Positions 264 through 46,959 of a stretch of 64,000 nucleotides of DNA are shown here, one piece after another. The stretch's first letter is position 1, and the number at the start of each line of letters is the position of its first letter. The DNA lies in the NCBI GenBank assembly GCA_965637545.1, contig OZ281497.1, positions 30,566,001 through 30,630,000 of the forward strand. The letters are read 5' to 3'. The notes under the pieces are model-generated. The model worked only from the letters and a program-made list of their open reading frames with translations, made no database searches and was not told the origin of the DNA. Both the position numbers and the translations under genes were made by a program. This stretch comes from Phallusia mammillata (Eukaryota).

Positions 264-269
264 TTTATT
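264..269 (-). promoter_or_regulatory. Polyadenylation signal of the NLR gene
   Basis: TTTATT on + (AATAAA on -), about 75 nt past the terminal-exon stop. Confidence 0.55.
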
Positions 270-341: not shown

Positions 342-506
342 TTAAAACACAACTTTTCCTCGCAACTTTGATCTGATGAGATTCTTCCCTGCTTCTGTGA
401 AGTGATTGCCCCGAACATTCAACACATTAATGTTGTGAACCACTCCTGCCAATGACTCAGTACTTTCATCTGTCAGCTTGTTCCAAGATAGATGAAGAAG
501 TTCCAT
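342..506 (-). CDS. Terminal LRR exon MELLHLSWNKLTDESTESLAGVVHNINVLNVRGNHFTEAGKNLIRSKLRGKVVF*
   Basis: Acceptor tattcttgttttag|ATG, phase 0, two LRR motifs, TAA at 342-344; a diverged paralogue of the 54-aa cassette. Confidence 0.85.
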   Translation of the reverse strand: MELLHLSWNKLTDESTESLAGVVHNINVLNVRGNHFTEAGKNLIRSKLRGKVVF

Positions 507-3500
507 CTAAAACAAGAATAAGTTAAACACAAGTAACACTCTAGTATGTTGTAATAAATGGTGCAGTATGACGACATAGTACAAAATATTTTTGAGTAAA
601 AAACGGATGTCACGTGTTGTGAAGTATGAAAAATAATTAATACTATAAGAAAAAATTAACAAACAAACAACTACTGATGTGTAGATTTGCTCGGGTTGTT
701 CGTAATCACATGAAAATCACCAAATAGCATTAAGTTGCCCTATTTTAAAAGTACCATTTTTCAATTGTCGTTTAGAATGCATATAATATGTGTCAGTAAC
801 TAATAAAATCACACCACTTTATTACATCAACAATCACAAAATAAGTTAACTTAGTGTGCATTTTTTGACTCGTGACTTTGTGTTTTTTGTGCAACTTGTA
901 CTAAGTCACCACATTTTTAGGTTATTTCCTCTTTACAGTCACGCTTATCTTTCAGCTGCAGTTTTGCTGAGCAAGCTAGATAGCAGCGGCGAAATCAGGA
1001 AACTACAAAGCTTTCGCGAGAATTATTTGTTCTTTTTGTCAATTGGACGGGTAGAGAAAGCGTCAAAGTCGAAAGATAGGCCGTGTTTCGGTTTTGGTAC
1101 TTTTTGGTTTGAGCCTGCTTAGAATTTTGAACAAAGCGCTTTGCCGCTTAACACGTCGTTTTGAACCAGAAAACTAAATAGGCAACGGGGCATTTTAGTG
1201 GCATTTTGACGTGTAAATTACGTATTCAGCCGTGCGGTCTAGTTTCGTATCGTGCGGACATTTGTGTGGGAAATTTTTCAAAGCAAACTTAGGACGTATA
1301 TGACGTCATTAGGGAAATTCCCAAAAGGAAATGTTGGACGCCCCCCCAAAAATTTCTGGATACGCCCCTGCTGGTGACCGTAAATTGATTAAAACTCGTT
1401 TCCTAGACAAACGGCCTTAAAAACTGGTCTAAATGGACTTTGTGTGAATGAATAGATACTACAAGCCCAGTAGCCATCTTAACCGGATTTTTCTATACTT
1501 ATTATGTGTAAACAATTTGAATAATGAAACAAGAAACAACGTTTCGATACACATGGTGACGTCATAAAAAGTTATTACTGATAACTAAATCGTTCAGATT
1601 TAATTGATCAAAAAATAAATAAATTGGACTTTTAGCAACCAGTAGATAAGATATAATGAGATAATTCACGTTTCTTTGCATCAGCAAAATATAAATGAAA
1701 ATACCCAAATATTTGGCGGTCCTTCGTGAAATATGAACCTGTGATACGGCCACCATTGCGTAAAGGTTATGCACCTCTGCTGTGGCGTTTAAACTGAAGA
1801 CTTTCCCATCTGAATGTGACACTTTTTGCCATTAGTTATTTGTGTTGTGTGGAGTGACGTGTATTGCGAGAAAATTGCCCAACCCTGTCATGAGGTGAAT
1901 CTGACTTATTCAGAAAAATGTTATTTGATGTAGCAGGAATGGAACAGAAAGACGCACGGGTTGAAACTCATAAATCGGCACAAACTTTCATGTTTTAATG
2001 TTAAGGAGTTCGAACCTAGGATTCGCCCTGCGCGGATCAAGACGGAAGCAGAAAACATATCGTTGACATCTTACATGACGTAATTGAAGGATTTCATTAC
2101 CACCTACGTGTCTTGTTGCGTCAGATATAACCCAATATTACATAGAAAACCAAAACAAATAGTAAATCTTTGCTATAAAGCAAAAAAAATATTTTTCGCA
2201 AGGTAGAATTCAACAATATTTACCGGTTTTCTTAGCTTTTTCACTCCATCGCAGAGTTTCTTGACACCTTCACTTTCGATCTCACATCCCTCCAGTATAA
2301 GTTGTTCCATGTTGTAAAGGCAAGGACCCAGTAAAGCTGTTCCCTTGTTGTCGATCTTGTTGTGGGAGAGTTCGAGTTTCTTCAGCTTATTTTAATGCAA
2401 CAAATATTATCCCACTCATCGTAGTGACAAATTTAAGTAACTAGAACTAAACAACACAACTTGGGATTACGCCTTGTTATTAATGCTACGACTTTTTAAC
2501 ACATAATTTCTGTTAAACTTTAAATTTGGCATTTCATCAATTAAAGATAAAGTAAGACATGAAAACATGAAAATTAAGCTGTAGAATGTTCACACTATTT
2601 TTGTTAAAGAGAATTTACAAACCAATCCTGGCTTTGCTAGCTTAATGTAAGAAATATATTTATTTTAATTGCGTTGTTTAAATTCCGCGTTTAAGCGCCC
2701 TGGCCTTGCTGCTTCGATTAAATTTCACATCCGTGTGTCGAGTGATGTGGTGTTATAGCAACACACGAGTAAAAAGTATGCGCTGCACGTTTGTTTTACT
2801 ATACGTTGTTGTACGTCATGCTGAATACAAAAAAGTGTGACAAAGTTGTTTGTTAGAAACAAAATATGTGTATAAGAGACAGTGTCGCATTCAAAATTCA
2901 GATTATCGCATAATCCAGTTAATCTTCTAAGAAAGCTACGTGTATTCATTATACCAGGGCTCGGCAACCTTTTTTGCTCTGCTCTGGATTCATATGCGTA
3001 GGATTCATATTTCATAGCGACCATGGAGTCAGGATAAAAATTTTACGTTTTTATTCTGACACCGTCCTATGACATCATTAATGCATTTCTATGCTGTGTC
3101 GCTGTAGCGCAGTAGTTTCCAAACTGTGCGTCGCAACGCTCTGGTGCATCGTTTCAATTTTCCAAGGGGGTCGCAGAATAGTTCCGTTTCGTGGATTTTT
3201 GTTGTTGTATCAATAAACGCAACTTTAATAAAAAGTGTCCTCATTAATTTTAATATGCTGGTGCGTCGCAAGTCCAGAAAACTTTTCGAGAAGTATCGCA
3301 GCAAAAAAAGTTCATTTTTGGACTTTATCATTTTAGTACAGTTCGATTTAAGTACTGACAGCCCGTTATTGCTACAGAACCTAAAAAGGCCGTTATAAAA
3401 ATTGGCGAGCACGACAAACTGTTGACAAATTGGCGACAAAAAACTGTTGTCAGAAGAATAAATCTCAATTCGTATCGTCCACAATATTACACTAGTTTGA

Positions 3501-6500
3501 CATCCTAGAAAACTAAAAATGAAAACTGTGACTTATGAGGAGTTCAGGAAACGAGCCACCGCCATAGTCGCATGCAATTATACGAAGTGAAGGGTAAGGC
3601 TCCGACTGGCGAGACGCACTCAAACAGTGGATGAAACCAACCGAGATTTCGTATTAGCTCTTGTAACGCTTGGATACCAAGACAACAAACTAAGAAATAC
3701 CATCCTGTACACTTCTCTGCCTCCTGTGCTAATCGGACAAACGCCTTGCAGACTTTACCGCGTGAAAATTGCTCGAAGGAAGAACCAAACTTCAGAGATG
3801 CGCCGGGTTGAGCAATTAACGCGAACGAGTTTGTTGTTAACAGTGAAAAGACGCAGTATTAATGTTGCCCAGCTTAAACCTGAAGTAAACCTGGTCGCTG
3901 AAGAATTGAAACGCTTGGCTGAGGAAAATAAACATTTGCGGCTGGAACTAAACGATTTGAGAAATGAGACCAAACGTTTTTCCTCTCGTCTGTGCTTTCA
4001 TTGCAATGGCGATAGACATTCCGCAAGAAAATGCAGGCAAGGGAGACCACGTTCTCCTATCAGGAGTCTGGGGTAAGCTCCAGGGCACAAAAACTCATTT
4101 GACACCAACGAGAGCATGCTGTACAAATATGCCAACGTTAACTTCAATGATATTTCTTGGTTTACACTAATCGGCACTTCGCCCACTGTCAGTGTGGTGT
4201 CAAGTGTAAGAAACTTACATATGTCAAGATGGAGTCTTGCCGAATAATTCAAGAGCTAATATGTGTTTGATTTAGCGTCGCTGATATCAAAGTCACTGCA
4301 TCTGTTTATATGTTGTCGGATGTCGTCGAGGAGTGGCCTTCATCAAACGGCCACGTCGTCAGATACGACAGTCAAGATTTTATCGAGCGCCTGAATAAAT
4401 ATGCAGCCAAAGAGCCGTGTATTTTTTGAGAGATACTTAACACACCTAGTGACCCAATTTTGGGTCGCAAGACCTTCCAGTCTGGGTCGCAAATTATTTT
4501 TAAGTTTCCAAGAATATAAGCATCGCATCCATAGGCGCCGAGTTTTGCAAAAAATGCAATGTGGCGGACGTAAAATATGACGTCACTTTGTGTGACGTCA
4601 CCAATGCGGGCAACCACAAGAACTCAAAAGCCCAACAAACTTTCAATAGAATGCAACGTTCGTCAAAATCAGAAAAATACGAAATATTTGAAATAATATT
4701 CCGCTGGCAATTGCAACATGTTGCTGTAGCGTTTATCATTGGTTTAGTAACGTTTAAAAAATGTTTCGTCAAGTTGTTGCTGCTTTATATTACGTTAGAT
4801 AACAATTTATTACTACACATTTGCATTGTACAAAGTAATGGCCGAACATTCACTGACAGGCAATTGTGTGTTTGACGTCATAAACAAGGCACTAACCACA
4901 ACAGGTTGCAGTTTTAAGCCACGTTTTGTGGTTGAATCGCCATTACGCTGGTTAAAAAGCAAAATTGTTTCTAATATTCTTGAGATTTCACGATATTTCG
5001 TACGATACCGCCACGAACTAACCAAAATTTCCACAGTGGCCGCCACCGTGCTTTACAAACTCAAGGTGGTGGCGCCACCACGCCACAGCCTACTTGGCGC
5101 CTATGATCGCATCTATAGTTTTAAAGATTTTCAGCTTTTTCAACCTCCTAATTATTATTGCATTGTTACATATGACTACGTAACTGTTACATCCAGCCTT
5201 TGTAACAGTCCAACCTTTGTAGCGTTACATCCAGCCTTTGTAGCGAACATTCGGTTTGCCCAACTAATTCAGTCGAAACGAATAATTTTACAAATATGCG
5301 GTTTTGGCTGAATAATATGTTGCGTTTCAGCCCAAACCGAATATTTTACAATCACAATTTTAAAGCGTAAAACGAGTCATTTGTGCCAAAAAAAAAAACA
5401 CAATCTTCTTAAATACTATCAACTACTTGCTAATAAAACCTACCATTACGCCAACTCATACAAAACGTCAGTTATATTATCATCAGACTGGCAACTATTC
5501 TTATGCAGCAACATCATGCTTGCCAGCTGATAGTAAAGCTCTATGTTACAAGAGAATAAGGAAGCATCTGTGTCGGTGTAAACAAACGTCGTAGTAACAT
5601 AATTTCAGCTATGAAGGTGGAAATTAGAACTTCTGTTAAAAACGTGTATTGCATTCAGCTAAGCGCACAATCCAGTTAAGCGCATAATAAAGCTTGGCAT
5701 ATTCATTCCACCATTTACTGGATATTGTGCGCAGCATATATCATAGTGATCATGAATTCAGGATAAAAGTACTGCTTATATTTTTGGTAATGTAAGAAAG
5801 GGATTGAATTGTTTTGTACTACAATAAAAATCTGCCTCAGCAACATGCCCAATAGCCGCGATATTGTATAGTGTTTTTCTCAAGGAAAGCACGTGCTGCA
5901 GGCTAGAAAAATAACTTCGTGTCGTCATAGATAGTACACCGCTCTCGCGCGTTATGCGCCAAAGTCCACCCTGACCAATCATTACCCCTGGACCAACAAC
6001 ATCGGTTGAAATTCCCCCCACACACACCAGTGCATACCTAGATTTTAGTAAAACAAGTCAATTTAATGTTAAAGTTTGGATAGGTGGGAGCTAAAGAAAA
6101 GGCTAACCTGCGTCAGTTTAGGCTATGCTCAAATAGTTCCAAAGTGTTTGAGTTTAACTTGAGGGTTGCGGATTTGGTCAATTTTATTTGAAATCTGCGC
6201 GAGGGCCAGCGGATCTTGATTGCCGGCCAAATAAATATGGCGACCCTGACCTCGAACCTTCGTGTGGCTATTAGGCATGCTAGGCCGGGGAAAAATAATT
6301 TATTAGCCGGCAAATATAAACCGGATTCATTAGAGCTGAGACATAGAGTTGCACGGTGATACATAACCGTTTTTGTGAAATATAACCACATACCAAGTTT
6401 TGGAACAATCATGTTACGATTATTTTCCATTAAAACGTTCTATACTATTAATAGTGCATGTAGTATGCGAAATATTTTTTCGGGTCTTATGATTATTAAT

Positions 6501-9500
6501 AGGGATGTACCGAATATTCGGTTTGCCGAATTTATTCGGCCCAATTATTTTTGCAAAGATTCGGTAAACAAAATATTTTACGAGACCAAATTTAAAGCGT
6601 TAAATTTGTCTTTTCTGCTTATTAAGGGTACCACGCAATCTTTCAAAATCCAAAACATAACCAAAATCGCTTCAATTTTTATTTTTTCAACACATTATTG
6701 TTTTTCCCACTGTAGTAAAGAAATTAGTAATTCTTCGGCAGGTTGCCAATCATGCTTTTTTCAACGACATATGACTAAAATGAGGGTGAAAAACACAAAA
6801 ATTCTCTACTAATTGCCTGGTAGAAAAACAATTTTTCATTTAAACGCTTAGCGTAGCACTTTGCGTAACGTCATGAATGATTCGGTTGATTCGGCCAAAT
6901 TTATTCGGCAACACAACTTAGGATTACGCCTTGTTATAAATGCTACGACTTTTTAACACATAATTTCTGTTAAACTTTAAATTTGGCATTTCATCAATTA
7001 AAGATAAAGTAAGACATGAAAACTTGAAAATTAAGCTGTAGCATGTTCACACTATTTTTGTTAAAGAAAATTTACAAATCAATCCTGGCTTTTCTAGCTT
7101 AATGTAAGAAATTTATTTAGGTTAATTGCGTTGTTTAAATTCCGTGTTTATGCGCCCTGGCCTTGCTTCTTCGATTAAATTTCACATCCGTGTGTCGGGT
7201 GATGTGGACTTACTATTAAGAGTTTGAACTGAGCACTGTCAGCCCGTTATTGCAGCAGAACCAAGACATGTTTAACACATGTTTGTATCACTATGAGTTT
7301 TGCACTTGATGGTAGATCATAAAGTGACAGATCAAAAATGCCTGAACATCCTATGACGCAGCTACAGACGAATCCAGTTAATCCAATAATGTTTAGTCGC
7401 ACAATCCGTTTAGTTGCATCAAGACCGTAATCCAAAACGGTAGCTCATTTGGTTATAAAATCGCCCGGTTAATCGCACACCTCTTCAGAACATAATCTAG
7501 ATAATCGGACGGATTTTGAACAAAATATGTGACTAACTGGAAAGTGGATTTCTATGTAAATGATTTCTCAAAACACAGTAAACGTAACCCATCGCCCATG
7601 GTTTAAAAGTGTGACTTGCTGAGTGGGAGATGAGACAGGCCTCTTTATCTTTTCCTCTTTTTCTCCATTATCGTAACACTCTTTATTGCTTTCAAAAATT
7701 GTCAAAGAAAACCGTCGTGGGCAATAAGTCCGAACATCTGAATTAGGACAAAAACAACTATAAAAAAAAACTAGAAGAGTGGCTTTCTGATATACTTCCA
7801 TTTTATATATTCTATACGATATTTACCAATTAACTATACACATCATTTGATCTACACATATGATTGTTTTTGTAAACAAAAACTAATGGGTCCCCACACG
7901 CGCGTTTGTGCGGATTTACAGTAAACAAATGTTGCGGTGATTTTTACATTCTTAAGGACAAATTTTTAGAAACCATTAACCCAACAATAAAAAAAAAATT
8001 GTTCGTATTCTTTTTGCACTATGATTGTCATGTAATTACAAAATTAAAAAAACGTAACAAAGACTTAAATCTAATCTCTTGCCTTGACCCAGATATAGTC
8101 CTCCAAGGTCGGGTTTTGAACAATTTTTTTAGAAAAGCTGTAACAGTTGTGTTACAGACACTTTAAATTAAAAAGCAATTTGCTACAAGTGTATACATAA
8201 CAAATTGTTTTTCATTTAACTTTGTTTCGCAAAACGAGTACCATTAACCAGTAGTAACCTCTCAGGGTGCACACGCCAAACGACTGTTTGACCTTTTGAC
8301 ACCGTTTTCAATAGCACGCCGTCATTCGTGTTCAACAATACTGTTAAGCCTAATTCATACATGCCTTGAGTATTGACTCCTTAATTGATTGTCAAAAAAA
8401 CGCTACGTTATGAAGAAAGTTCTGAGCTGTGTTTGTAATACCGACTAGTTGACCTTAAGTAACCCGTGATCATGCGGCAGCCAACCTGACAACGAGCATT
8501 TAAAAAAACATTTATTTGGCAAAACTCAAGTTAATTTTTTCATCTTAACTTTTATTAACAAAGTTTTTCTTGACATATACAAAACCGAAGCACGGTTATT
8601 AGGTTTAAATCACGTCATAGGTGTAAAACCTTCGCCAAAACTAAAAATGTGAGTGATAACTTAATAAAACGACATAGCATTGCTGTGCAAAACAGCTGAT
8701 TTCTAATCACTGAAACGACGTCTCGTAAAACGTCTGTCCGACGTCAAGCTGAGCCCTCCCGCTATCGTAAACCAGTGAGTTACTCTCTTGGTACTTCTGC
8801 CTACAGTGTTTTTCTTGACCAAACGGGCGTTAGACACATCTATGTTTCGGGGGCCTATGGGTGAACCTCTGGGTCATACGGGGTCAAAATTCACATGGAC
8901 CATCTATAGACCAATATCTGCAATGTGTGTAAATTTGAAAAAGTTTAAACCATTCTTTCTTGACCAAAACGTGGGAATAATAGCCGCACTAAAAATTTCA
9001 CGTTTTGGGGGGCTGTGGGTGAACCGGGAGATCAAACGGGGTCAAAATTTACATGGACCATCTTTAGACCAATATCTTTAATGTGTGTAAATTTGAAAAA
9101 GTTTAAACCATTCTTTCTTGACCAAAACGTGGGAACAAATCTGCGTTAGAAAGAAAAAAAGAAAAAAGAAAAAAGAAAAAAAGAAAAAAGAAAAAAAAAA
9201 TATAGACAAAAACAATATGTGTCCCCTTCAGGGAAGGGGACCCATAACCAATCGGTTTGTGCCATATTGTAGAATGTGTGTGTATATTGCTAAATCACGA
9301 CTTTGCGCCGTTTTGTGAAAGTTGATATGCTTCTGAAAACGTAATTTTACTTACGCCATGCTACAGTAAAGGGAAAGGAAGCATCTCTGTCGACGTGAAC
9401 GGGCGTCATCTCTGTCGACGTGAACGGGCGTTTTATATTTTTCATTTGTGTTGCTGACTATTCTTGAAACACACGTTACCGATGACCCATTACATGCCAT

Positions 9501-30500: not shown

Positions 30501-33500
30501 ATCTTTACAGTTGATTTAATTGTGACGACATATTTGAATTCTGACGCAACAAAGGTATATTAGAGTGACAATCATCACTTTCAATATTTAAAAATCATTC
30601 GCACCCAAAGCAACTATTTTAAAGCGCCAGTTGTCAGTATAAAAATATCTGCAAAAAACATTTACATGGTTATAAAAATGCATTTTTTTAGATTAAACGA
30701 AGTTGAAATAACCAGGTTGCCACGTTTGTAATTGGATAAAATCTTGTATATCACTTAGATCGAAATTCAATATTTTTTACCGGCTTTGTTAGCTTTTTCA
30801 CTCCATCGCAGAGTTTCTCGACACCTTTGCTTCCGATCCCACATTCATCCAGTATAAGTTGTTCTTCGATGTTGTGAAGGCAAGGACCCAGTAAAGCTGC
30901 TCCCGTGTTTCCGATCTCGTTGCCGGAGAGGTCAAGTATCTTCAGCTGATTTAATGCAACAAATATGATCATATTTATCGTAGTGACGAATGCTAGTAAA
31001 TCAAAATAGACAAACCAACACAACTTCGGATTACGCCTTGCTATAAATGCTACGACTTTTCATGGACGGATTTAATTAAAACCTGCAATCAGATTTGTAT
31101 TTTTTCTGATGCTTGTGTTTTGCCAAACATCGCTTATTTCGTTGGCGCATATTATATTTTTTTTCATTTGTAAACCCGCCGAAATCGTTGCTTATATACC
31201 TAAGGCGAGCGTTCCCTGTTTAATTGGTGAAGATCAAAAATAGAATGATTCCAAACGCGCGACAAACATGAAAGGCACAATTAAGACGCTTCGTAAGTAG
31301 CGGGCCTGTAGAGAAGTATAGGTTATGAACTAATAAATAAATATTACAGACTGACAGGTGTGACAAGATGGCAGATATACAAGTTGGATATGTGAATGAA
31401 TTTCAATAAATATTCGTATATTGTCACCAAGACACAGATATATAGACAACACGATTCTACTTCTGCTACAGACATATAATCGACAATCGGTACACATGGC
31501 GATTCTACATATTGGCTCAAGTTGCATTAATACTTTGGTCTGTTGTGACACTTGCAAAATCGCATACGAATATTGTTATTTTCTTTCTGTATTGTGCACC
31601 CTGACTGTTTTCAGTTTTACTTTTTAGGTCATGCTTTGACTTTCAACAGTTTTGTTTTGTCTGTTTATTTGCGGACGTTATATGTTTTAATGCATTTGTT
31701 CTTGCTCTTGTGTATATCGAACTTAACAGTTTTATGTGGACAATTTCACATTTCACTTTATTTTCCACGCCCTTCTTTGTTTATATTTACCCTTATATTT
31801 ATATGATATATACAGCTATGTTTACTTTTCAGCCTGTAACGACACCATTATATACCGAAACATGTTACCATCACTTTCAGCCAGCCTAACGCACAAGTAA
31901 AGTTTTTACCCGACATGCGTGCTTGGTAATGATTGGACGTTAGTCATGTGACGTTTTATTGAATTTCCTTTTATAAATGGTTTTAAACGTGGTGATATAG
32001 AGTGTAGAATTGTGCTGTTTGCAAACGTTGAAGTTACGCAGTTGTGCCTTGATTTTAATTGTTTATATTTGTGTAAGGTTGTTTACAGTTGAAACCCTGT
32101 TTGGTGTGACCATCTCACCGCTTTGTTGGCGCCAACAGTAGCCGCATTCGAATGGAAGGGCTAATAAATGTTTATTTTAGCGTTGCTGGAATGAAAATCT
32201 CTGCTTCTGTTTATGTGGTCGGATGTCGTCGAGAAGTGCATTTTTAACACTGTGTGGTTAAATACAAGTTGATGACGCGGTCCGGAAATGATGGGGCAGT
32301 GTCCTTGTTACCTAAACCATGGACTGATTCCTCAGTAGTGATCGAGAGAACCATGGAAGCGTGTTTTAACGATGTTGCAGTAAGTCGCAAGCAAATAGTG
32401 TTTGGGGAATGATGAACACCAAAAGCTTCGATTTTCCAGATGTCTTTGCAAAAACAAGAAAATGACAAAATCTAACAAGTTATTGCAAAACATCGTGCTG
32501 CGTTTGCAGTTGCGTCAGAGTATCTTGGCCGTTTTTTAACTACACTTAATATAGTTTGACTCCTATTCTGCAACACCCTTGACGAACGGCCACTTCGTCA
32601 GATACGACAGCCAAAATTTTATACAGCGCCGAAAATAGATATGCACCGAAGGACAGTGTTTAAGCGCAATACATTGGTGCTGTTTCTTGACACATGTATG
32701 ATATATGCTTTAACATAATATTGTTTTGTTGTATGTTTTGTTTTAGTTCTACGCAGACGAATCCAGGTAATCCAATACTGGATAATCGCCCAATCCGTTT
32801 TATTGCATAGAGATGGTGAATCCTAAACCGTAGCTAATTAAAAAATCGACTGGTTAATCGCATACCTTTTAATAGCATAACCCGTATATTTGCATAAAAA
32901 GGATTGGCATATTGATTTTGCGAATAACTGGATTATGCCAATAACTGGAGTTGTCTGTACAGCATATGTCATAGGGACCAAAGATTTTAAATTCTTAGAT
33001 ATATAGCTGACTAGTTTTCGCTGCAAAAACAGTGAATATATACTGTTAGCCAGTGTGTCAGTGTTTATAATTGTCAATCTTGTAGAAAAAAGTTACTACT
33101 GCTTTGTACAGATTTAAATATATGAGTTAGGTAAAATTACAATTACATTTTCATGGTGTGTCACACACCACCCATTTTTACATACAAAAGCAGTTTGTTA
33201 CTCAATAATACTGGTGTCATTTGATTACCACTGTGTGGCTTGCATTGCTTCTTCCAATAAATCGATCTATACTGTTATAGTTTTTTTATGCACATGTTTT
33301 TATTTTGCTTTGTAATTTTGCTTTGGCGCAAATAGTTTACCGTTTCTCAAACAGATATGTTTGCTGTTAAAATATTCACACAACATATATTTCAACAAAC
33401 TTTACCGGCTTTGTTAGCTTTTTCACTCCATCGCAGAGTTTCTCGACGCCTTCACTTTCGATCCCACATGCAATCAGTATAAGTTGTTCCATGTTGTGAA

Positions 33501-36500
33501 GGCAAGGACTCAGCGAAGCTGCTTCCGTGCTGCCGATCTCGTTGAAGGAGAGGTCGAGTATCTTCAGCTTATTTTAATACAATAAATATTATCACATTTA
33601 TCGTAGTGACGAATGCAAGCAAATAAAAATAGATAACACAACACTACATTTGATCAGATTACGCTTTGATATACAGTGTTGTAAATGTTGCAATTTGTTT
33701 AATCCCAAAAAAATAAACTCAACCCTGATTTAACTCAAACTAATAATTATTTTCAAACGATTCACAGTGGTGCATTTGCGTAGCAATTGTTTGATGGACG
33801 TTTCTGACAGAACATTTTTTATATCATTGCATGCAAATGTAGCGAAATTTTATTTGCTTGTTAGTTTTTGTCACTTATTGTTTTCGTTCTTTTTCGTTGT
33901 GGCACCTTCATTACGTTTTTGTGTTGTGGCACCCTCGCTGCTTCCCCTTAGGAGTGATTAGGTATGAAAGCGTTGATTGCGCCGGAATATGCCTTCCTGT
34001 TCCGCATGCCTTAAATAGGGCGTCACTAGTTGATGGTATGGCTTTTCTCTGGGCGCCGTGAAACTTAGTGATGTTGGTAATGGTATTGGTGGTGGGTTGC
34101 CACGTGCCCAGTGTAACGTCGTCGTTTTTACATTGTTTTAAATATAAGTCGCGCCCATAAGCTAGTGTGAGGGAGTATAATTGGCTTTAGTGGTGAGCCG
34201 TTATTGCAGGGTTCTGGACCTAAGCAGGTTTGGTGCATAAGATCGAGTTAGCAGGCCTGCCGAAATAATTCCGTAACAAATTGGCGAGCACGTCAGGACC
34301 CTGTCACCACAACACCGCTGTTTTAGTTTAAGAGAGAAGCCGGTTTCCGTTCGTTTTAGTTTGTTTTCGCTCATGTGTTGTATTAACGATGTTTTTTAAT
34401 GTAATGATGAAATCTCCGCGTTATGGTGGAGATTTAGGTTTGCGTAATTTTACCGTGGTGCTGGCGACCTACTGTCGCGATGTTGGAGCTCCAGAAGGAC
34501 ACAGGACCAAGTTGTTACTTGATCTGGTTTCAGACGAGCAGTTGGCTTATTTTCGACGGGCGACGCCCTGTTCTGAAGTCAGCTATGAAGATTACAAGCG
34601 ACTCGCCATGTGGGGTTGGTTGCAGACGTTTGGTGAAGGGCTTCGGGCCCATGTCGCTTCACCAAACTTGATGCCGGTGCTAGTCGACGGAAAATCCAGA
34701 CGAATCGCTTCTCCTGATATATGCAAGGGGTCAGAAAATGAGTCCCATTAATTCGAAGAATCTATTCGACGAGCCGGTTGCTCTTTTTCTGCGTTTTCGC
34801 AAAGTGCATTTGGTATTTTTGTGACTGTGTGTTTTTTGGAAACACCTCTTGCGCCCATTAATAAGAGACGCATGAGTCGGAAACGCTGTGTTTGCAAACC
34901 TATGTTGTTGTGCAACAACCCCGTTATGGCCAAAAGTTTGTATTCCAGGCCGATATGATGTTTTGACTGTTGATGGCGCTGAACTGCTCTGTGTGCACTT
35001 TTAGAGCTGCTAACTGAAGTTTGCTTAATCCTACGGGAGTAGGACGAATTCAGGTTGAGGGGAATGTAGCGAATTTTTATTTTGCTAGTTTTGTCACCGT
35101 CACTTATTGTGTTCGTTGTGGCACCTTAATTACGTTTTTGTGTTCTGCCCCCCTCGCTGCTTCCCCCTTAGGAGTGATCAGGTGTGAAAGCGTTGATTGC
35201 GCCGGAATGTGCCTTACTGTTCCGCATGCCTTAAATAGGGCGTCACTAGTCGATGATATGGCTTTTCTCTGGGCGCCGTGAAACTTAGTGTTGGTGTTGG
35301 TATTGGTGGTGGGTTGCCACGTGTCCAGTGTAACGTCGTCATTTTTACATTGTTTTGAATATAAGTGACGCCCATAAGCAAAACCAGCGTGAGGAAGTAT
35401 AATTGGCTTTAGTGGTGATCCGTTATTGCAGGGTTCTGGACCGGTTACGAATTAAGTAAGCAGGCTTGGTGCATAAGATCGATTTATCAGGCCTGCCAAA
35501 ATATTAGGTAACAAATTGGCGAGCACGCCAGGACCCTGTCACCACAACACCGCTGTTTCAGTTTGTGAGAAAAGCCGGTTTCAGTTCGATTTAGTTTGTT
35601 TTCGTTTATGTGATGTTTTTTAATGTAATGATGAAATCTCCGCGTTATTGCCGAGATTTAGGTTTGCATAATTTTACCACGGTGCTGGCGACCTACTGTC
35701 GCGATGTTGGAGCTCCAGAAGGACACAGGACCAAGTTGTTACTTGATCTGGTGTCAGACGAGCAGCTGGCTTATTTTCGACGGTCGACGCCCTGTTCTGA
35801 AGTCAGCTACACTGTAAATGCTAAAGATGGATTTGTGTTAGGTGGATTTTTTTTCCACCCTTTTTCGTAGGTTGTATCTTTTATATGTACCTTTCCGGGC
35901 ATATTTTACTCCTTTTGCCTTTACATTAAAGGTGGAATATGGTTTTTTTCCCCGTTGTGCCAGTTTCGTGGTCAACATTGTTTCTTACCGGGCGTAGCCC
36001 AACTAAATTACACTTTGTGCGTAAATTAACTTATTTGATTGTTGTTTACTGTTTTTTTATTCAGTAGTTTTGTAAAAGGCGTTGGAATAAAACGGCCGCC
36101 ACCACACCAATGCTCAACTACTGCGCATGCGCGCTTGCATTTTGTAGACCAGGTTGCTGCGAAAAACACGCGTTTGAGTTTGTAGTCTGTGTGTTTATCT
36201 ATGCTAATCAGGTAATGCTGTGCAGTCAGACAGTAAGAAGTTTAATCCGAAGTTTCTTAAAACAAAACGGTTTGTATATGCTGTGTTTAAATTGTCTTTG
36301 TTGACACGTTCTAATGCCCAGTGCAGCTATGCAGTGTTACTACTGAAGATTTCTAAAGTGCCGGGTTACATTACAATATTTGTTGTTTGGAATACGAAAC
36401 TATGGTGTATGGAAAAACGCATATTTGTCATAAGTTGGACATTAGTATGTTACCTACTGCATTAGTTATTTTTGTTTTTTAATTTTTGGAGATGTTTTTT

Positions 36501-39500: not shown

Positions 39501-42477
39501 ATGGCGAATTTGCGTATTGGTTCAAGCTGCATTACAACTTTGGTTATTTCCATCACTTGTAATCGCATACGAATATTTTTCTTTTTTATTGTATTGTACA
39601 CCAAGGCTGTTTTTTTGTACTTTTTTTTATTGGTTGTGCGTTGATTTTTAATAGTTTTCTGTTGTCTGATTATTACTATATTTTGGTGCATGTGTTGTTG
39701 CTTTTTGTGTATATCTAACATTATTATTTTCACAATTGCACATTTTACATTATTTTCCACGCCTTTGTTTATATTGAACCATATATGTATATGATATACA
39801 CAGCCATTTTTACTTCTTAGCAAACAAAGACACCATTATATACCGAAACATGTAACCATCAATTTTATTCAGCGTGATGCAAAAGTGAATAAAGTTTCGA
39901 CGCGACATGCGAGGTCAGTGTAACTAATAATAATTTGACGATAGTAACGTGGCGTTGTTTTAACTTTCGTTTGAGAGAATTTCGACAGTTTGGGCCTCGT
40001 TGTGTTTGTGTTCTTTTATGGTTGTATGCGTAGTGATATAGTGTCCAGTTGTGGAAAATTTTTTTTACAAATAAGAGATTCAAATTGTAATTGACTGAAG
40101 TTGGCTGCTACGAAAATTATGCAAAAACACATATCTTAGATTTTAAAACAACAATTTATGCACAAATCCCAGTGTTACCGGTTTCTCTCTGTGTTGAATC
40201 ACGAAGGAAAGATTCTCGTAGTCAACTGGGAGGAGAGATGATTGACGAAGGTCGAGCTCATCAGGAAGTAGGGAGGCCACAGATGAAGCAATCTCCGGAT
40301 CATTTGACTCATGAGCCCAGCTGCAAACCTGCATGATTTCTCCTTTACTGCTGAACTTCGGCTTGGACTGGATGAATTTCAGAAGCAAAGATTTCTTTTG
40401 CTTCCAATCTTCGAGGGAACTTTCAGGAACAACTGGCTCGAGTTGATCGAAAACCGAAGAATCGCAAATCCCGAAAACAAACTTGGAAACAACTTCCCAT
40501 CTGTCGTCATTAAGTTGTTTGAGGATTTTCTCAAACTTATCGGGGGACATGATCATCATCAGGTAGAAAGCAACAAAAAACTCTTGCCAGATAAGATGAG
40601 AGAAATATCGAACTTTGTGGCCATCCAATATCGTCAGCTTGAGATTCCCGTGCTTTGTGACTGACGTGTTTGTAAATGCACCGGCTGTGGATTCCTTGAT
40701 ACCTGCTTTTGTGAATGCTTTTAACTTGAATACGATCTTCATCTTTAGAAATGCATCATAGGCCAACTTCGCCAGTTTGTCCAACTCACCTTCTTGGTCC
40801 CTTAAATGGTTGGTTGTGAGATATTGGCCACAAGTGAAAGCAAGGACTCGAGTGAGTGAAACAAAGTGAATATCTCCATCGTAATTCATCAAGTACACTA
40901 GTGTCAATATAAAATTGACCGGAACATAACAGTAAGCGAATACATTGCGGTTTTGCTCTAGTTTTTGTTGTACATCTTCATATCTGTCTTCACATATCTG
41001 ACGTCCAAGTTCATTTTGTGATGTTGGGGTCAATCCAAGTATTTGAACAATAAACCTGGGTCGATATGAAGGATGGAGCTTGTATAGCTGAGTTGGTCGT
41101 GACGTGATAATCTTACGAGCACGTGGAAGCAAGTTTCCTCCCGCCAAATGCTTCAGGTAGTTTTCCGCCCTGGATTTCGAATATAGTTGGGGTTCGGGAA
41201 CTTTAGTGGAGAATGATTTAAAAGCTGCCTCGTCACATCCGTCGAAAATCATCACAACATTTGGATCATTGCAAATGGCTTTTAGAATGCTTTTTTCTTG
41301 TTCCAAAGTGTAATCTTGTTGAATCGACATGGTGGAGAGAAGGAACTCAAAAAGTGTCATCTTTTTTTTAAAATCGATGTGCCTGACCACAATGTAAAAG
41401 AAGAAGGAAGTTTCTCCGAACAACTCTCCTCTTAAACCTTGCATGGCCCACTTTTTGGCTGAGGTCGTCTTTCCTATTCCAGCTTGTCCGACCACACCGA
41501 CCACGTTTCCATGTTTTTCCACGTAATCTTCTTTGGCTTTTGCTTCATCCGGTTTGAATTTCCATTCCGCTTCTTGTTGCGCTGTTTCTTTTGCACGAAC
41601 AAACATTTCTTCACCAGTGATCCCACTTTGTGGTATGTTGTAAACCTTTGCAAGCTCCTTTCTGCTGCGATAATGTCCTTCTGCTTGAAACTCATTATCA
41701 ATTCGCTGTGGTTTGTCTACTATGGCAAGGTTGACAGGTGTTATTTTCCGTTCAGCAATATCAGCTAGAGACGATTCTTCACTGGCGATTTCTTGTGCTC
41801 TTTGTTTGAGCAACGACATCAATTCTAAAAAAGAATTAAAATACTCATGTTTTCCGTGGTACTTCGTTGATGTTGAAGGTTTATGTTCAGAAAACCTCTG
41901 CCTTTGTGCCGATGATGTAGATGTATCGGGGAGATTGGATGTAGTTTTTTCATCTAAGAATTGTGGAGCAGGCAACTGAGACAAGCAGTGAGCTTGTTCG
42001 GGTGAGGGGGACGTAGTAGGGAGTTCAGGTACAGTTTCCTCATCTAAATGGTGTTGAGCAAGCCACTGAGACGAGCAGTGAGCTTGTTCGTATGTCTGAT
42101 ACACTGTTACATGTTGTGTGAAGTGTTGTTGATAGACTGGAGCGTTGTAAACTGATCCAGTTGTGTGGATGTTTGTGTCTCCAATCTGAGGTGCTTGTTC
42201 GCTTTCCTGCACAAAAAGAAGATTTGAAGAAGAATACGGTATGATATTGTGTAATACTTACCAAGTTGAAAACCAAATTCCTGCCCTGCACATCAACCGG
42301 CAAAGGATGGCCTGAGCTTGATTGAGGTATCATAGCCCTGGATTCTTCCGTTGCGCTGTGCTGAGGTACAACGTCACCCTGTCTTTGGACCGTGTTTGAT
42401 TGGGGATCAGCATCATCTAGTTGTTGGATCAAGCGAGGTTGGGGTTCAACCGTACCCGGGTCGTCCATTGTAAAGAA
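342..42477 (-). CDS. Multi-exon NLR-like receptor gene (low-complexity N-terminus, NACHT, ribonuclease-inhibitor-type LRR array); about 1232 aa from ATG 42468 if all exons are included
   Basis: Manual exon chain, all junctions phase 0 with GT/AG: 42477-42262, 42206-40179, eight LRR exons, 506-342. NACHT motifs and LRR consensus recognised by eye. The 5' end may extend further upstream. Confidence 0.85.
2224..2385 (-). CDS. LRR exon 8: LKKLELSHNKIDNKGTALLGPCLHNMEQLILEGCEIESEGVKKLCDGVKKLRKP
   Basis: aataag|CTG...CCG|gtaaat; 162 nt, open, phase 0-0. Confidence 0.85.
3320..4255 (+). mobile_element. LTR-retrotransposon remnant (partial LTR, PBS, gag with CCHC knuckle), copy 1
   Basis: TGGCGAGC PBS at about 3402; CFHCNGDRHSARKC zinc knuckle in ORF 3627..4076. 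Confidence 0.75.
8700..9245. mobile_element. Non-autonomous element with internal direct repeat, (GAAAAAA)n tract and terminal hairpin (Helitron/Helentron-like)
   Basis: Internal ~160-bp direct repeat; 9-bp stem GTCCCCTTC/GAAGGGGAC at 9221-9241; absent from sister duplicons. Class assignment is inference. Confidence 0.3.
10427..10863 (+). mobile_element. hAT-type MITE with TAGGGATGTACCGA TIR
   Basis: Copy of the 15727-16198 element; degenerate TSD. Confidence 0.65.
10957..11118 (-). CDS. LRR exon 7: LKKLDLTNNKIGNTGTASLAPCLHNMEELILARCEIRSEGVEKLCDGVKKRRKP
   Basis: tataag|CTG...CCG|gtaaat; 162 nt, open. Confidence 0.85.
12085..12299 (+). mobile_element. hAT (Charlie-like) MITE, 215 bp; further copies at about 3110, 17393-17607 and 20499
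   Basis: CAGTAGTTTTCAAAC...GTTTGAGAACCACT TIRs; perfect 8-bp TSD CTGTAGCG. Confidence 0.8.
12301..13350 (+). mobile_element. LTR-retrotransposon remnant, copy 2 (LTR 12301-12498 TGTAGC...GTTACA, PBS, decayed gag)
   Basis: TG...CA termini, TGGCGAGCACG, gag fragments in ORFs 12619 and 12846. Confidence 0.75.
15727..16198 (+). mobile_element. hAT-type MITE, 472 bp
   Basis: TIR TAGGGATGTACCGA / TCGGTACATCACTA; perfect 8-bp TSD GTTATTAG. Confidence 0.82.
16292..16453 (-). CDS. LRR exon 6: LKTLDLSNNKIGNTGAASLAPCLHNMEQLILRGCEIESEGVEKLCDGVKKLTNP
   Basis: aatcag|CTG...CCG|gtaaat; 162 nt, open. Confidence 0.85.
17609..18660 (+). mobile_element. LTR-retrotransposon remnant, copy 3
   Basis: Homologous to 12301-13350, with different frameshifts. 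Confidence 0.7.
19518..19679 (-). CDS. LRR exon 5: LKILDLSHNKIGNTGATSLAPCLHNMEELILYGCGIESEGVEKLCDGVKKLGKP
   Basis: aatcag|CTG...CCG|gtaaat; 162 nt, open. Confidence 0.85.
20700..21615 (+). mobile_element. LTR-retrotransposon remnant, copy 4 (LTR 5' part deleted)
   Basis: Homologous to 3320-4255. Confidence 0.7.
21909..22953 (+). mobile_element. Non-autonomous hAT element, 1045 bp; truncated copies at about 4450-5230 and 13650-14470
   Basis: TIR CAGGGGTCCGCAA / TTGCGGACCCCTG; TSD CTATAACA/CTATATCA (7/8). Confidence 0.8.
25392..25553 (-). CDS. LRR exon 4: LKRLDLSYNKIGNTGAVSLAPCLQNMEQLILWGCGIGSEGVEKLCDGVKKLTKP
   Basis: aatcag|CTG...CCG|gtaaaa; 162 nt, open. Confidence 0.85.
28092..28253 (-). 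CDS. LRR exon 3: LKIFDLSCNKIGNRGAASLAPCLHNMEELILRGCEFGSVGVKKLCDGVKKLTKP
   Basis: aatcag|CTG...CCG|gtaaaa; 162 nt, open. Confidence 0.85.
30781..30945 (-). CDS. LRR exon 2: LKILDLSGNEIGNTGAALLGPCLHNIEEQLILDECGIGSKGVEKLCDGVKKLTKP
   Basis: aatcag|CTG...CCG|gtaaaa; 165 nt (one extra codon, in frame); visible inside ORF 30751..31023. Confidence 0.88.
33406..33567 (-). CDS. LRR exon 1: LKILDLSFNEIGSTEAASLSPCLHNMEQLILIACGIESEGVEKLCDGVKKLTKP
   Basis: aataag|CTG...CCG|gtaaag; 162 nt, open. Confidence 0.85.
33838..37577 (+). mobile_element. Tandem small LTR element: LTR(33838-34278)-internal-LTR(35065-35513)-internal-PPT
   Basis: TGTAGCG...TAACA LTRs, PBS TGGCGAGCACG(T/C)CAGGA after each, GAGGGGAA polypurine tract before 35065 and at about 37568-37575. 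Confidence 0.75.
35810..37123. mobile_element. 1.3-kb insertion with CACTGT...ACAGTG ends
   Basis: Interrupts the second internal copy relative to 34570-34620. Confidence 0.4.
40179..42206 (-). CDS. NACHT NTPase exon (676 aa) of the NLR
   Basis: Walker A GVVGQAGIGKTT, Walker B VVMIFDGCDE, sensor-1 IITSRP, winged-helix FSHLIWQEFFVA, HD2 RWEVVSKFVFG. Acceptor ttctttttgtgcag|GAA; donor ...EKP CCG|gtaaca, phase 0. Confidence 0.93.
42262..42477 (-). CDS. N-terminal low-complexity exon (FFTMDDPGTVEPQPRLIQQ...GRNLVFNL)
   Basis: Donor TTG|gtaagt and a 55-nt intron in frame with the NACHT exon; acceptor caacctag|TTC; in-frame ATG at 42468. Confidence 0.7.
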
Positions 42478-43715: not shown

Positions 43716-43775
43716 TCATGCAGAAAGGGCTGATCGGTGATCGGTACATGCTGGTGCGTTTTCGTGCACACCTAC

Positions 43776-44090
43776 ATCCGGCATCAAGTATAAGATGAGA
43801 TTGGGTTCAAAATCATCTGGTTTTTGGGTCAAGTTAGGTTGGGGTTCAGTACTATCTGGTTCTTGGTGGGTCAAGCTAGACTGAGGTTTAACATCAGCTG
43901 TTCTTTTAGTCATGCTGGGTTGGGGTTTAGCATCATCTGGTCCTTGGGTTAAACTGGATTGGGGTTCAGAATTATCTGGTCAAGCTGGATTGGAACTGGG
44001 TTCTTCGAGACAGGTTGGACTTGGTTGCTTTGTTATCACTTTTGCGGGATGAATTAATCTTTTTTAGATAGTTTATTGCCCATCCGTTAA
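43776..44090 (-). pseudogene. Candidate upstream exon with 13-14-aa repeats (PDxxEPQSSLTQ-type) carrying a frameshift
   Basis: Repeats resemble those of exon 42262-42477; candidate tttag|TT acceptor and GAT|gtaggt donor; the frame breaks at about 43975. Confidence 0.4.
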
Positions 44091-45375: not shown

Positions 45376-46293
45376 CTGTCAACAAATATATTTAAGATTA
45401 GGATTGCTTGTCATTAGTTTAGGTTTATTAACGAATTGCCATAAGCATCCAGTTGACAAACGCAAGTGTAATTAAGGTTTCACAGTTTTGCCATAAAATA
45501 ATACTGTGGTCAAAAACATCAATCTCAGTTCATCACCCACCACGCTTTGAAATAGGAGGGAACTTTAAGCATTTTTGGCAAGTTCTAAATGCTTTTGCCA
45601 AACGACGCAGTTAAGTGCCACGCGCTTCGAGCAAGTTTGCCGAAAGTTTTGATTTCTGACATGAAACAAGCCAAAGGCAATAACTTGTACAGGGGTAATT
45701 ATAAACACTTGAAGACATTTAAGTTCAATGTTAACCAACCATTTTTTGAACCTAGCTTCGATATGGACATAATTGATAAATTGCGTAATGAGTTTCAAAA
45801 CGTTGGTAAGAACAGGCAGAATTCAAACCAGTGTGCTTTTAACATGGAAAAACGTTTTACAAATCATTGGGAGGAGTATCACCTCAAATCGGACACACAT
45901 CTTCAGAGATTAGTTGCATGTGATGTGCAACAAGCTCGAGATGTCGTGTGTGCCGAAAGTAGACGAGTCGTGTCAAGGAGGAAAGACTCCACCTCTTCCA
46001 CATCCAGGCCATCAAAAACGGCCTGCACCTCGGAGGGCACCGGACAGGAGTTCTACAACACTCAACACCACGAAGACAAGAGTGCTGCATCTCGAGTGCA
46101 GTTAAGCCTCGTGGTTCCCGTGGTGTTGAGGTGAGCGCTTATGAGGTTAAACCTCGTGGTCCCCGTTGTGTTGAGGTGGGTGACCATTAGATGCATCCTT
46201 CTAGTCCCAGTTGTTGCGGTGGGGGCACCCAAATTGTATCGCTTTGGTACCCGTGTTGCATAAGCGCTCACCGCACAGCGCAACAACTAGAAT

Positions 46294-46810: not shown

Positions 46811-46959
46811 CCCCGACTTTCACACCACGGTAACCACATTAATACATTTCAGGTGCGCAAACCCCAACACCACGGAACCAGATCAAGGACACAAGGTCGC
46901 ATCTCTGGTGCCAAGACCCAAGTTTCAGTCGGTTGCTGCTTGTTATATAAACTATGTGA

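What the first reader, a model, noticed from the sequence alone, without database searches (positions are those of the whole stretch)
342..42477. One NLR whose LRR sensor is a tandem array of eight interchangeable phase-0 exon cassettes
Seen: a NACHT exon ending ...EKP|gt (phase 0), eight 162/165-nt exons each encoding two LRRs and bounded by ag|CTG...CCG|gt, and a phase-0 terminal LRR exon. Any subset or number of cassettes therefore stays in frame (up to 2^8 skip patterns). Established: NLR LRRs set ligand specificity, and cassette-based diversification is known for Dscam and lamprey VLRs. Inference: this locus could be an innate-receptor diversification system acting through germline exon duplication/loss and possibly alternative or mutually exclusive splicing.
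Basis: partly seen in the sequence, partly recalled or inferred. Interest (0 to 1): 0.9.

Follow-up and report, generated by a model that had tools for sequence, protein, structure and literature searches.

The report
Sea-squirt NLR with duplicated LRR exons
This is an intact innate-immune NLR gene of a sea squirt whose sensor domain was enlarged by recent tandem copying of one two-repeat exon; the in-frame exon design is the standard NLR layout, and the available RNA data give no evidence that the copies are mixed and matched by splicing.

Summary
On the minus strand lies an 11-exon, 1232-codon NLR gene. It has a short first exon, a 2028-nt NACHT exon ending EKP|gt, eight cassettes (seven of 162 nt, one of 165 nt) all bounded ag|CTG...CCG|gt, and a terminal LRR exon. 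Every intron is GT..AG and phase 0. The closest named relative is an ascidian protein (Phallusia mammillata, 75% identity).

The cassettes sit in tandemly duplicated exon-plus-intron blocks, so germline exon duplication is shown. In the youngest blocks (C5-C8) the exons have diverged about twice as much as the adjoining introns. Changes pile up at codons 3, 8, 32 and 33, in the predicted beta-strands. Cassette arrays of three Clavelina NLR genes also vary mainly in these strands (positions 5, 7, 8, 30, 32, 33). This suggests diversifying selection on ligand-contact residues.

The splicing half of the idea is not supported. RNA-like contigs confirm the splice borders, but every joint can come from adjacent cassettes, alleles or paralogues. 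The one apparent skip carries the exact end of cassette 4. No Dscam-like docking or selector sequences exist.

In-frame two-LRR exons are already described for vertebrate NLRs (PMC6642158, PMC4852459). Verdict: a new member of a known kind, of moderate interest.

The parts
42262..42468 (-). Coding exon 1: ATG at 42468, 69 codons, donor TTG|gtaagt, phase 0
   Evidence: Sequence read. The junction NLVFNL|ESEQAPQ matches NMVFNL-RSEQAPQ in the Phallusia mammillata protein P0001.
40179..42206 (-). Exon 2, 2028 nt, 676 codons. Holds an N-terminal low-complexity region with two copies of a peptide repeat, NACHT (Walker A GQAGIGKT, Walker B VMIFDGCDE), winged-helix and HD2 regions. Ends REKP|gtaaca.
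   Evidence: Pfam NACHT at E 5.1e-18, with weak NOD2_WH and NLRC4_HD2 hits. Motifs found. Homologues.
33406..33567 (-). LRR cassette C1 (162 nt, two LRRs)
   Evidence: RNA-like contigs end exactly at both borders
30781..30945 (-). LRR cassette C2 (165 nt, one extra codon after codon 26)
   Evidence: spliced joints at 30781 and 30945
28092..28253 (-). LRR cassette C3 (162 nt)
   Evidence: spliced joints at 28092 and 28253
25392..25553 (-). LRR cassette C4 (162 nt)
   Evidence: its exact 3' end is seen in RNA-like contigs
19518..19679 (-). LRR cassette C5 (162 nt)
16292..16453 (-). LRR cassette C6 (162 nt)
   Evidence: LRR_6 at E 8e-12
10957..11118 (-). LRR cassette C7 (162 nt)
2224..2385 (-). 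LRR cassette C8 (162 nt)
342..506 (-). Terminal LRR exon: acceptor ttttag|ATG, 54 codons plus TAA stop at 344-342. Differs in sequence from the cassettes.
   Evidence: LRR_6 at E 9e-5; weak cassette-HMM hit
264..269 (-). AATAAA poly(A) signal about 75 nt after the stop codon
   Evidence: sequence only; 3' end not mapped
2150..23734 (.). Younger family of tandemly duplicated exon-plus-intron blocks carrying C8, C7, C6 and C5 (block identity 91-94%)
   Evidence: self-BLAST; exon versus intron divergence
24534..33643 (.). Older family of duplicated blocks: a two-cassette super-unit of about 5.4 kb present twice (C4+C3 and C2+C1), 84-88% identity
   Evidence: self-BLAST
43794..43961 (-). Exon-1-like peptide-repeat sequence upstream of the gene. 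Possibly an extra or alternative 5' exon, or a remnant; status unknown.
   Evidence: tblastn of P0001 residues 2-48, 48% identity; ORF 43716-43913; no Pfam hit

Best explanation
This is an intact, expressed NLR (NACHT-LRR) innate-immune receptor gene of an ascidian. Its ribonuclease-inhibitor-type LRR horseshoe is encoded by two-LRR exons in phase 0, which is the layout of its gene family and of animal NLRs generally. In this gene one such exon, together with its flanking intron, was copied in tandem in the germline in at least two waves. That produced eight near-identical cassettes followed by a distinct terminal LRR exon. By default all eight are spliced in series, giving a horseshoe of about 18 LRRs. 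The cassette scaffold stays conserved, while a few residues in the beta-strands that line the concave face (cassette positions 3, 8, 32, 33) differ in almost every copy. Each duplication therefore adds a new patch of recognition surface. Shown here: the gene model, the duplication blocks, use of the splice borders in RNA-like data, and the concentration of changes. Inferred: positive selection, ligand binding by the concave face, and constitutive inclusion of all eight cassettes.
For: The gene model is an open frame of 1232 codons with all introns GT..AG and phase 0. NACHT has intact Walker A and B motifs. The best named homologue is ascidian, at 75% identity. Duplicated exon-plus-intron blocks are seen. 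For C5-C8, 30 of 162 exon sites are variable against 52 of 539 intron sites (Fisher p = 0.003), and mean pairwise distance is 0.104 against 0.051. dN/dS is about 1 or higher in many cassette pairs, while 27 of 54 residues are invariant and positions 8 and 32 show 6 and 7 different residues among 8 copies. In cassette arrays of three Clavelina genes the variable positions lie in the same two strands, at 5, 7, 8, 30, 32 and 33. An AlphaFold model of a relative's array (pLDDT 76) places strands over cassette positions 1-7 and 26-34, and its best structural matches are NOD2, NLRP3 and ribonuclease inhibitor. Runs X1-X3 cover only the exons and join them exactly at the predicted borders. Paralogue-like loci show six diverged phase-0 LRR exons of about 162-165 nt after the NACHT exon.
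Against: No N-terminal effector domain (PYD, CARD or death domain) was detected, so downstream signalling is unknown. The excess of exon over intron divergence rests on few sites and on copies that are not independent. Exon-limited gene conversion from other cassettes could also produce it. In the older blocks exon and intron diverge about equally, which would also fit relaxed constraint. X1-X3 are only guessed to be RNA. Many of the contigs laid differ by 5-8% from the window, so they come partly from alleles or paralogues. No transcript spanning the whole array was seen, so inclusion of all eight cassettes is not demonstrated.
Confidence: 0.72

Rival explanations
1. Cassette skipping occurs at an appreciable level, stochastic or regulated, as with exon 5 of human NLRP3. 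One gene would then yield several receptors with different LRR numbers.
For: All cassettes are phase 0 with nearly identical and rather weak splice signals: donors CCG|GTAAA(A/G/T) and short AT-rich acceptor tracts. Clavelina RefSeq isoform pairs diverge exactly at cassette borders: 5 versus 10 cassettes, and a terminal exon versus a further cassette. LRR-exon skipping is documented for human NLRs (PMC6642158).
Against: No clean skip junction was found. The only apparent skip, C1 to C3, carries the exact C4 end, and a C4-to-C5 junction would be laid at that place. Other odd joints run backwards, which linear splicing of this locus cannot give, so they mark cross-mapping. The Clavelina isoforms are computed models and differ in alternative 3' ends, not internal skipping.
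Confidence: 0.22
2. This is a Dscam-like or VLR-like diversification system, with mutually exclusive or combinatorial choice among the eight cassettes, or somatic assembly of them.
For: Only the in-frame interchangeability of the cassettes and their hypervariable positions.
Against: There is no conserved complementarity between intron 2 or the last intron and the cassette flanks; only 13-18-nt AT-rich matches with E above 1 were found. A receptor with a single cassette would have about four LRRs. The gene is complete and colinear with canonical splice sites, unlike an incomplete germline VLR gene. Cassette-to-cassette junctions are seen in RNA-like contigs, so inclusion is not mutually exclusive.
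Confidence: 0.03
3. The array is evolving neutrally: a recently expanded, functionally redundant or decaying LRR region under relaxed constraint, with no adaptive diversification.
For: dN/dS is close to 1 in many pairs. In the older blocks exon and intron diverge equally.
Against: None of the eight copies has a stop codon or a frameshift, and all splice sites are intact. 27 of 54 positions are invariant, and the changes concentrate in the two beta-strands that also vary in independent Clavelina arrays. Exon divergence in C5-C8 exceeds intron divergence rather than equalling it.
Confidence: 0.1
4. The eight-copy array is an assembly artefact, with the repeat number inflated or mis-ordered.
For: The blocks are 84-94% identical, which can mislead assemblers. 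DNA run X5 gives a few short contigs with joints that would remove a block, for example 30556 to 33394.
Against: The copies differ by 6-15% and each has its own hypervariable residues, which is enough to keep them apart. X5 covers all 30 bins of the 5.6-kb stretch tested. The X5 joints have only 20-33 nt on the shorter side and lie in repeats.
Confidence: 0.04

Closest known systems
Vertebrate NLRP/NOD genes with modular LRR exons (human NLRP3; Hoss et al. 2019, PMC6642158)
   Same: One large NACHT exon is followed by a row of equal-sized exons. Each encodes two ribonuclease-inhibitor-type LRRs, with the exon border at the same place in the repeat, so exon loss stays in frame. The predicted fold of a relative's array best matches NOD2 and NLRP3.
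   Different: Cassettes are 162 nt (26 + 28 residues) rather than 171 nt (28 + 29). The copies here are recent tandem duplicates, 85-93% identical, whereas NLRP3's exons are old and diverged. No PYD or CARD was found. Skipping is shown for NLRP3 exon 5 but not here.
Zebrafish NLR-B30.2 (NLR-C) family (Howe et al. 2016, PMC4852459)
   Same: The exon plan is the same: the NACHT region on one exon, each LRR unit on its own exon, a variable number (0-6, more in group 2b) of one LRR type, and one distinct last LRR present once. N-terminal peptide repeats are also present.
   Different: The fish LRRs are reported as not very variable, with selection acting on the B30.2 domain. Here there is no B30.2 domain and the LRR strand positions are the variable part.
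Fungal NLRs with highly conserved internal repeats (Podospora NWD/HET; Dyrka et al. 2014, PMC4986451)
   Same: An NLR whose repeat units are very similar to each other while a few surface positions are hypervariable. Diversification is by repeat duplication and exchange.
   Different: The fungal repeats are WD40, ANK or TPR within one exon and recombine within the coding sequence. Here the units are LRR pairs on separate exons with kilobase introns. Cassette amino-acid identity to C1 is 69-81%, mostly below the 85% used in that paper.
Brown-alga ROCO/LRR candidate receptors (PMC11378527)
   Same: The title and abstract describe LRR-encoding exons that diversify by exon shuffling and alternative splicing.
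   Different: They are ROC-COR GTPases rather than NACHT proteins, from an unrelated lineage. I read only the title and abstract; the text search of the paper failed.
Dscam exon clusters and lamprey VLR assembly
   Same: Arrays of similar in-frame coding cassettes in an immune-related receptor gene.
   Different: Dscam uses mutually exclusive choice guided by docking and selector RNA pairing, and none was found here. By established knowledge, VLR cassettes lack splice sites and are copied somatically into an incomplete gene. This gene is complete and spliced conventionally.

Membership tests
Animal NLR (NACHT-LRR) receptors | NACHT NTPase domain with Walker A and Walker B motifs | tested here: met
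   Pfam PF05729 at E 5.1e-18, 65.9 bits against a cutoff of 26.7. GQAGIGKT at residue 309 and VMIFDGCDE at 387.
Animal NLR (NACHT-LRR) receptors | Winged-helix and helical domains after NACHT | tested here: inconclusive
   NOD2_WH (16.9 bits) and NLRC4_HD2 (20.1 bits) hits are both below their Pfam cutoffs. Homologues carry these families in precomputed annotation.
Animal NLR (NACHT-LRR) receptors | C-terminal ribonuclease-inhibitor-type LRR domain | tested here: met
   LRR_6 hits in cassettes, 26.3 and 44.7 bits against a cutoff of 23.4. The model of a relative's array matches NOD2, NLRP3 and RI with TM 0.7-0.8.
Animal NLR (NACHT-LRR) receptors | N-terminal effector domain (PYD, CARD, DD or BIR) | tested here: not met
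   No Pfam family in exon 1 or in the first 235 residues of exon 2. Only peptide repeats are present. Some NLR subfamilies lack such a domain, so this does not exclude membership.
NLRs with modular LRR exons (as defined in PMC6642158) | Each LRR exon encodes two repeats, has uniform length, and its border lies at the same repeat position | tested here: met
   Seven exons of 162 nt and one of 165 nt, all ag|CTG...CCG|gt, with the border just before the LxxLxLxxN strand.
NLRs with modular LRR exons (as defined in PMC6642158) | LRR exon skipping observed in transcripts | tested here: inconclusive
   Short contigs cannot order the cassettes. The apparent skip is explained by the C4-to-C5 junction.
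Dscam-type mutually exclusive exon clusters | A docking site and per-exon selector sequences able to pair | tested here: not met
   Only 13-18-nt AT-rich complementary matches with E above 1.
Dscam-type mutually exclusive exon clusters | Only one cassette per transcript | tested here: not met
   Cassette-to-cassette junctions are present in RNA-like contigs of X1-X3.
Lamprey VLR-type somatic assembly | An incomplete germline gene, with flanking cassettes that lack splice sites and are copied in somatically | tested here: not met
   The germline gene is complete and colinear, with canonical GT..AG around every cassette. Somatic DNA was not examined.
NLRs with highly conserved internal repeats (fungal type, PMC4986451) | Internal repeat identity above about 85% at the amino-acid level, with hypervariable surface sites | tested here: inconclusive
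   Cassette amino-acid identity to C1 is 69-81% and mean column identity is 84%. Nucleotide identity is 85-93%. Hypervariable sites are present.

The most novel reading that the evidence does not exclude
Ascidian NLRs may form a receptor family whose LRR sensors are built from near-identical two-LRR exon cassettes. These would expand, contract and exchange by unequal recombination or short-tract gene conversion, while the concave-face residues are kept hypervariable. That would be an intron-containing animal counterpart of the fungal conserved-repeat NLRs. Cassette number would vary between haplotypes and, through alternative 3' exons or skipping, between transcripts.
Probability: 0.35. Interest if true: 0.6.

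Novelty: new member of a known kind. Interest (0 to 1): 0.38.

Why it matters
Tunicates are the closest living relatives of vertebrates and lack antibody-type adaptive immunity, so how they widen innate recognition is a real question. This locus gives a dated picture of one route. A whole exon-plus-intron block is copied in tandem, and each new copy differs mainly in the two beta-strands that also vary in arrays of another ascidian. That makes the ligand-contact residues of an uncharacterised receptor family predictable and testable. It does not reveal a new diversification mechanism: in-frame LRR exons and their potential for skipping are already described for vertebrate NLRs.

Tried and rejected
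1. Ordering the cassettes in transcripts with read laying failed. The runs are kept as short contigs of 47-190 nt, and C1, C2 and C4 share their last 40 nt. Backward joints (C3 to C2, C3 to C3, C1 to C1) and loose ends leading to foreign terminal-like exons (MKRLNLSYN, MERLSLSGEE) show cross-mapping from other cassettes, alleles or paralogues.

2. The apparent skip of C2 was rejected after the 33448 G>A difference identified the contig's 3' piece as the exact C4 end.

3. A search for transcript-derived peptides spanning junctions, using the cassette profile against the 5.8-billion-protein set, found one unrelated 73-aa hit. Fragments that small are evidently not in the collection.

4. The first docking/selector k-mer scan timed out. 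It was redone with blastn-short and found nothing above chance.

5. The name COS1.5 carried by the best homologue has no biological literature in the library. No paper mentions both Clavelina lepadiformis and NLR.

6. Earlier findings of this scan held nothing near this place or under these words.

7. Folding the window's own LRR domain was not possible, because a spliced protein has no reference and long sequences may not be typed. A relative's array, P0132:640-950, was folded instead.

8. DNA-level joints in X5 that would delete a block, such as 30556 to 33394, were not taken as evidence of copy-number variation. Their shorter sides are only 20-33 nt and they lie in repeated blocks.


Full report
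**What is there.**
The window has no N and about 38% G+C. The largest ORF lies on the minus strand at 40143-42212 and matches Pfam NACHT at E 5e-18. A scan for AG|CTG...CCG|GT with an open frame returns exactly eight minus-strand exons and none on the plus strand:
- C1: 33406-33567
- C2: 30781-30945 (165 nt; the other seven are 162 nt)
- C3: 28092-28253
- C4: 25392-25553
- C5: 19518-19679
- C6: 16292-16453
- C7: 10957-11118
- C8: 2224-2385

A profile HMM of the eight finds them again at E 1e-33 to 1e-37. It also gives a weak hit to the terminal exon, and finds no extra or decayed copies. Each cassette holds two LRR_6-type repeats.

**Gene model.**
- Exon 1 is 42468-42262 and ends TTG|gtaagt.
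- Exon 2 is 42206-40179 and ends REKP|gtaaca.
- The terminal exon is 506-342, preceded by ttttag, and ends in TAA. An AATAAA follows about 75 nt later.
- Joined, the eleven exons give 3699 nt, or 1232 codons, with no internal stop. All ten introns are GT..AG and phase 0.
- Walker A (GQAGIGKT) and Walker B (VMIFDGCDE) are intact.
- No PYD, CARD or death domain is detectable at the N-terminus, which contains peptide repeats instead.

**Whose gene.**
The best named homologue of the NACHT exon is 'COS1.5' of the ascidian Phallusia mammillata, at 75% identity. Its exon 1/exon 2 junction agrees with the model here. Next among named proteins is a Clavelina lepadiformis protein labelled NLRP3-like. 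Vertebrate NLRP and NLRC proteins are distant, at about 25% identity. The window therefore comes from an ascidian, probably a phlebobranch.

**How the array arose.**
Self-comparison shows that the cassettes sit inside tandemly repeated blocks that include kilobases of intron.
- The blocks with C5-C8 are 91-94% identical.
- The blocks with C1-C4 form a two-cassette super-unit of about 5.4 kb that is present twice, at 84-88% identity.
- Between the two block families, homology is confined to the exon plus roughly 100 nt around it.

Germline duplication of exon-plus-intron units is thus directly visible and happened in at least two waves.

**How the copies differ.**
- The cassettes are 85-93% identical at the nucleotide level.
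- In the C5-C8 blocks, 30 of 162 exon sites vary against 52 of 539 adjacent intron sites (Fisher p = 0.003). Mean pairwise distance is 0.104 against 0.051.
- In the older blocks, exon and intron diverge about equally.
- dN/dS is about 1 or above in many pairs.
- Yet 27 of 54 residues are invariant, while position 8 shows six residues and position 32 seven residues among eight copies. Positions 3 and 33 show four each.
- These positions fall on the x residues of LxxLxLxxN/C. By established knowledge of LRR structure, those residues face the concave sheet.

A profile search of 1.84 billion proteins finds Clavelina NLRs with 5-10 near-identical 54-residue cassettes. In arrays of three different Clavelina genes the variable positions are again 5, 7, 8, 30, 32 and 33.

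An AlphaFold model of one such array (P0132:640-950, pLDDT 76, folded from a single sequence) alternates strand and helix. Its strands cover cassette positions 1-7 and 26-34. Its best solved matches are NOD2, NLRP3 and ribonuclease inhibitor.

The simplest reading is a conserved scaffold with diversifying selection on contact residues. Exon-limited gene conversion could produce part of the same signal, and I could not separate the two.

**Is the layout special?**
No. Contigs carrying paralogue-like NACHT exons (L002, L003) show six diverged ag|...|gt LRR exons of about 162-165 nt in the same phase, so the plan is family-wide.

It is also the published plan of vertebrate NLRs. Hoss et al. report 'strict exonic modularity' as 'a precondition for alternative splicing'. 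They describe 171-bp exons that each encode two LRRs, with the border at a fixed position, and show skipping of NLRP3 exon 5 (PMC6642158).

The zebrafish NLR-B30.2 family has the NACHT region on one exon, 0-6 copies of one LRR type each on its own exon, and a distinct last LRR present once (PMC4852459).

Fungal NLRs show near-identical repeats with hypervariable surface sites (PMC4986451).

**Test of the splicing idea.**
Runs holding the NACHT exon were found. Four of them were laid on 28050-33650, which is 5601 letters and so within the operators' limit, and which contains C1-C3.
- X5 covers every bin and behaves as DNA.
- X1-X3 cover essentially only the three exons, plus one intronic repeat near 30030-30090. 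They join exons exactly at 28092, 28253, 30781, 30945, 33406 and 33567. The predicted borders are therefore used, and the family, very probably this gene, is expressed.

The joints cannot be read as isoforms, for four reasons:
- The contigs are only 47-190 nt long and many differ by 5-8% from the window.
- Some joints run backwards (C3 to C2, C3 to C3, C1 to C1).
- Some loose ends lead to terminal-like exons that are not in this window.
- The last 40 nt of C1, C2 and C4 are identical.

The one apparent skip (33406 to 28253, X3) has a 52-nt piece with a single difference, 33448 G>A. That makes it the exact end of C4. The start of C5 differs from that of C3 at only 3 of 40 positions, so an ordinary C4-to-C5 junction would be laid at that place.

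There is thus no clean evidence of skipping, and equally no proof that all eight cassettes are always included.

A search for Dscam-like docking and selector complementarity found only 13-18-nt AT-rich matches with E above 1. Cassette-to-cassette junctions in the RNA-like runs also rule out strict mutual exclusivity.

In Clavelina, RefSeq isoform pairs diverge exactly at cassette borders: 5 versus 10 cassettes, and a terminal exon versus a further cassette. These are computed models, and they use alternative 3' ends rather than internal skipping.

**Verdict.**
The locus is a real, intact ascidian NLR gene with a recently expanded LRR array. The combinatorial or mutually exclusive splicing part is unsupported, and in its strong form disfavoured. 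The exon design is already known. I rate it a new member of a known kind, of moderate interest. The more interesting open possibility is that ascidian NLRs as a family evolve by cassette expansion and exchange with hypervariable contact sites.

Noticed in passing
window 46289-49307: Two minisatellite arrays: a 46-bp unit with 11 copies (89% match) and a 45-bp unit with about 52 copies (68% match). G+C is 0.47-0.51 against 0.38 elsewhere, with strong skew. The period of 45 nt equals 15 codons, and long ORFs run through the arrays on both strands (47565-48182 minus, 48001-48498 plus).
   Followed up: partly
window 43716-43961 (minus): Sequence resembling the N-terminal peptide repeats of the Phallusia homologue (P0001 residues 2-48, 48% identity) lies 1.3 kb upstream of the start codon. 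It could be an alternative or extra 5' exon, or a remnant.
   Followed up: partly
window 4826-5311, 14047-14532, 22297-22692 (plus): A 131-161-codon ORF recurs inside the duplicated introns on the opposite strand. It has no Pfam match and is probably part of a repeat element carried along with the blocks.
   Followed up: partly
window 33893-37577: Intron 2 contains internally repeated, G+C-richer elements: 33893-34585 resembles 35112-35809 at 89%, and 34610-35066 resembles 37121-37577 at 96.5%. They look like transposon insertions.
   Followed up: no
window 61211-61831 (minus): A 206-codon ORF contains a motif that looks by eye like the start of a retrotransposon reverse transcriptase (IPKSSGGWRACGDYRRLN). 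Pfam gave no hit at E 0.01 or better.
   Followed up: partly
window 41930-42090 (minus), within exon 2: Two tandem copies of a roughly 30-residue peptide (EQAHCxSQ...LDEExxxxLPxTS) precede the NACHT domain. This recalls the N-terminal peptide repeats described for zebrafish NLRs (PMC4852459).
   Followed up: no
Clavelina lepadiformis proteins P0276/P0132 and P0271/P0123: RefSeq isoform pairs of NLR genes are identical up to a cassette border and then differ: 5 versus 10 cassettes with two paralogous terminal exons, and a terminal exon versus a further cassette.
   Followed up: partly
window 28050-33650, run X5 (DNA): Short DNA contigs show intron indels (skips of 91-351 nt) and joints that would remove a whole block (30556 to 33394; 29194 to 30777). 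These may be structural polymorphism or repeat cross-mapping. The shorter sides are only 20-33 nt.
   Followed up: no
window 10934-11229 and 16269-16564 versus 30757-31060: Between the two block families, homology is limited to the cassette plus about 100 nt. Synonymous divergence between some cross-family pairs is very low (dS 0.03 for C1-C6). This hints at short-tract gene conversion centred on the exons.
   Followed up: partly
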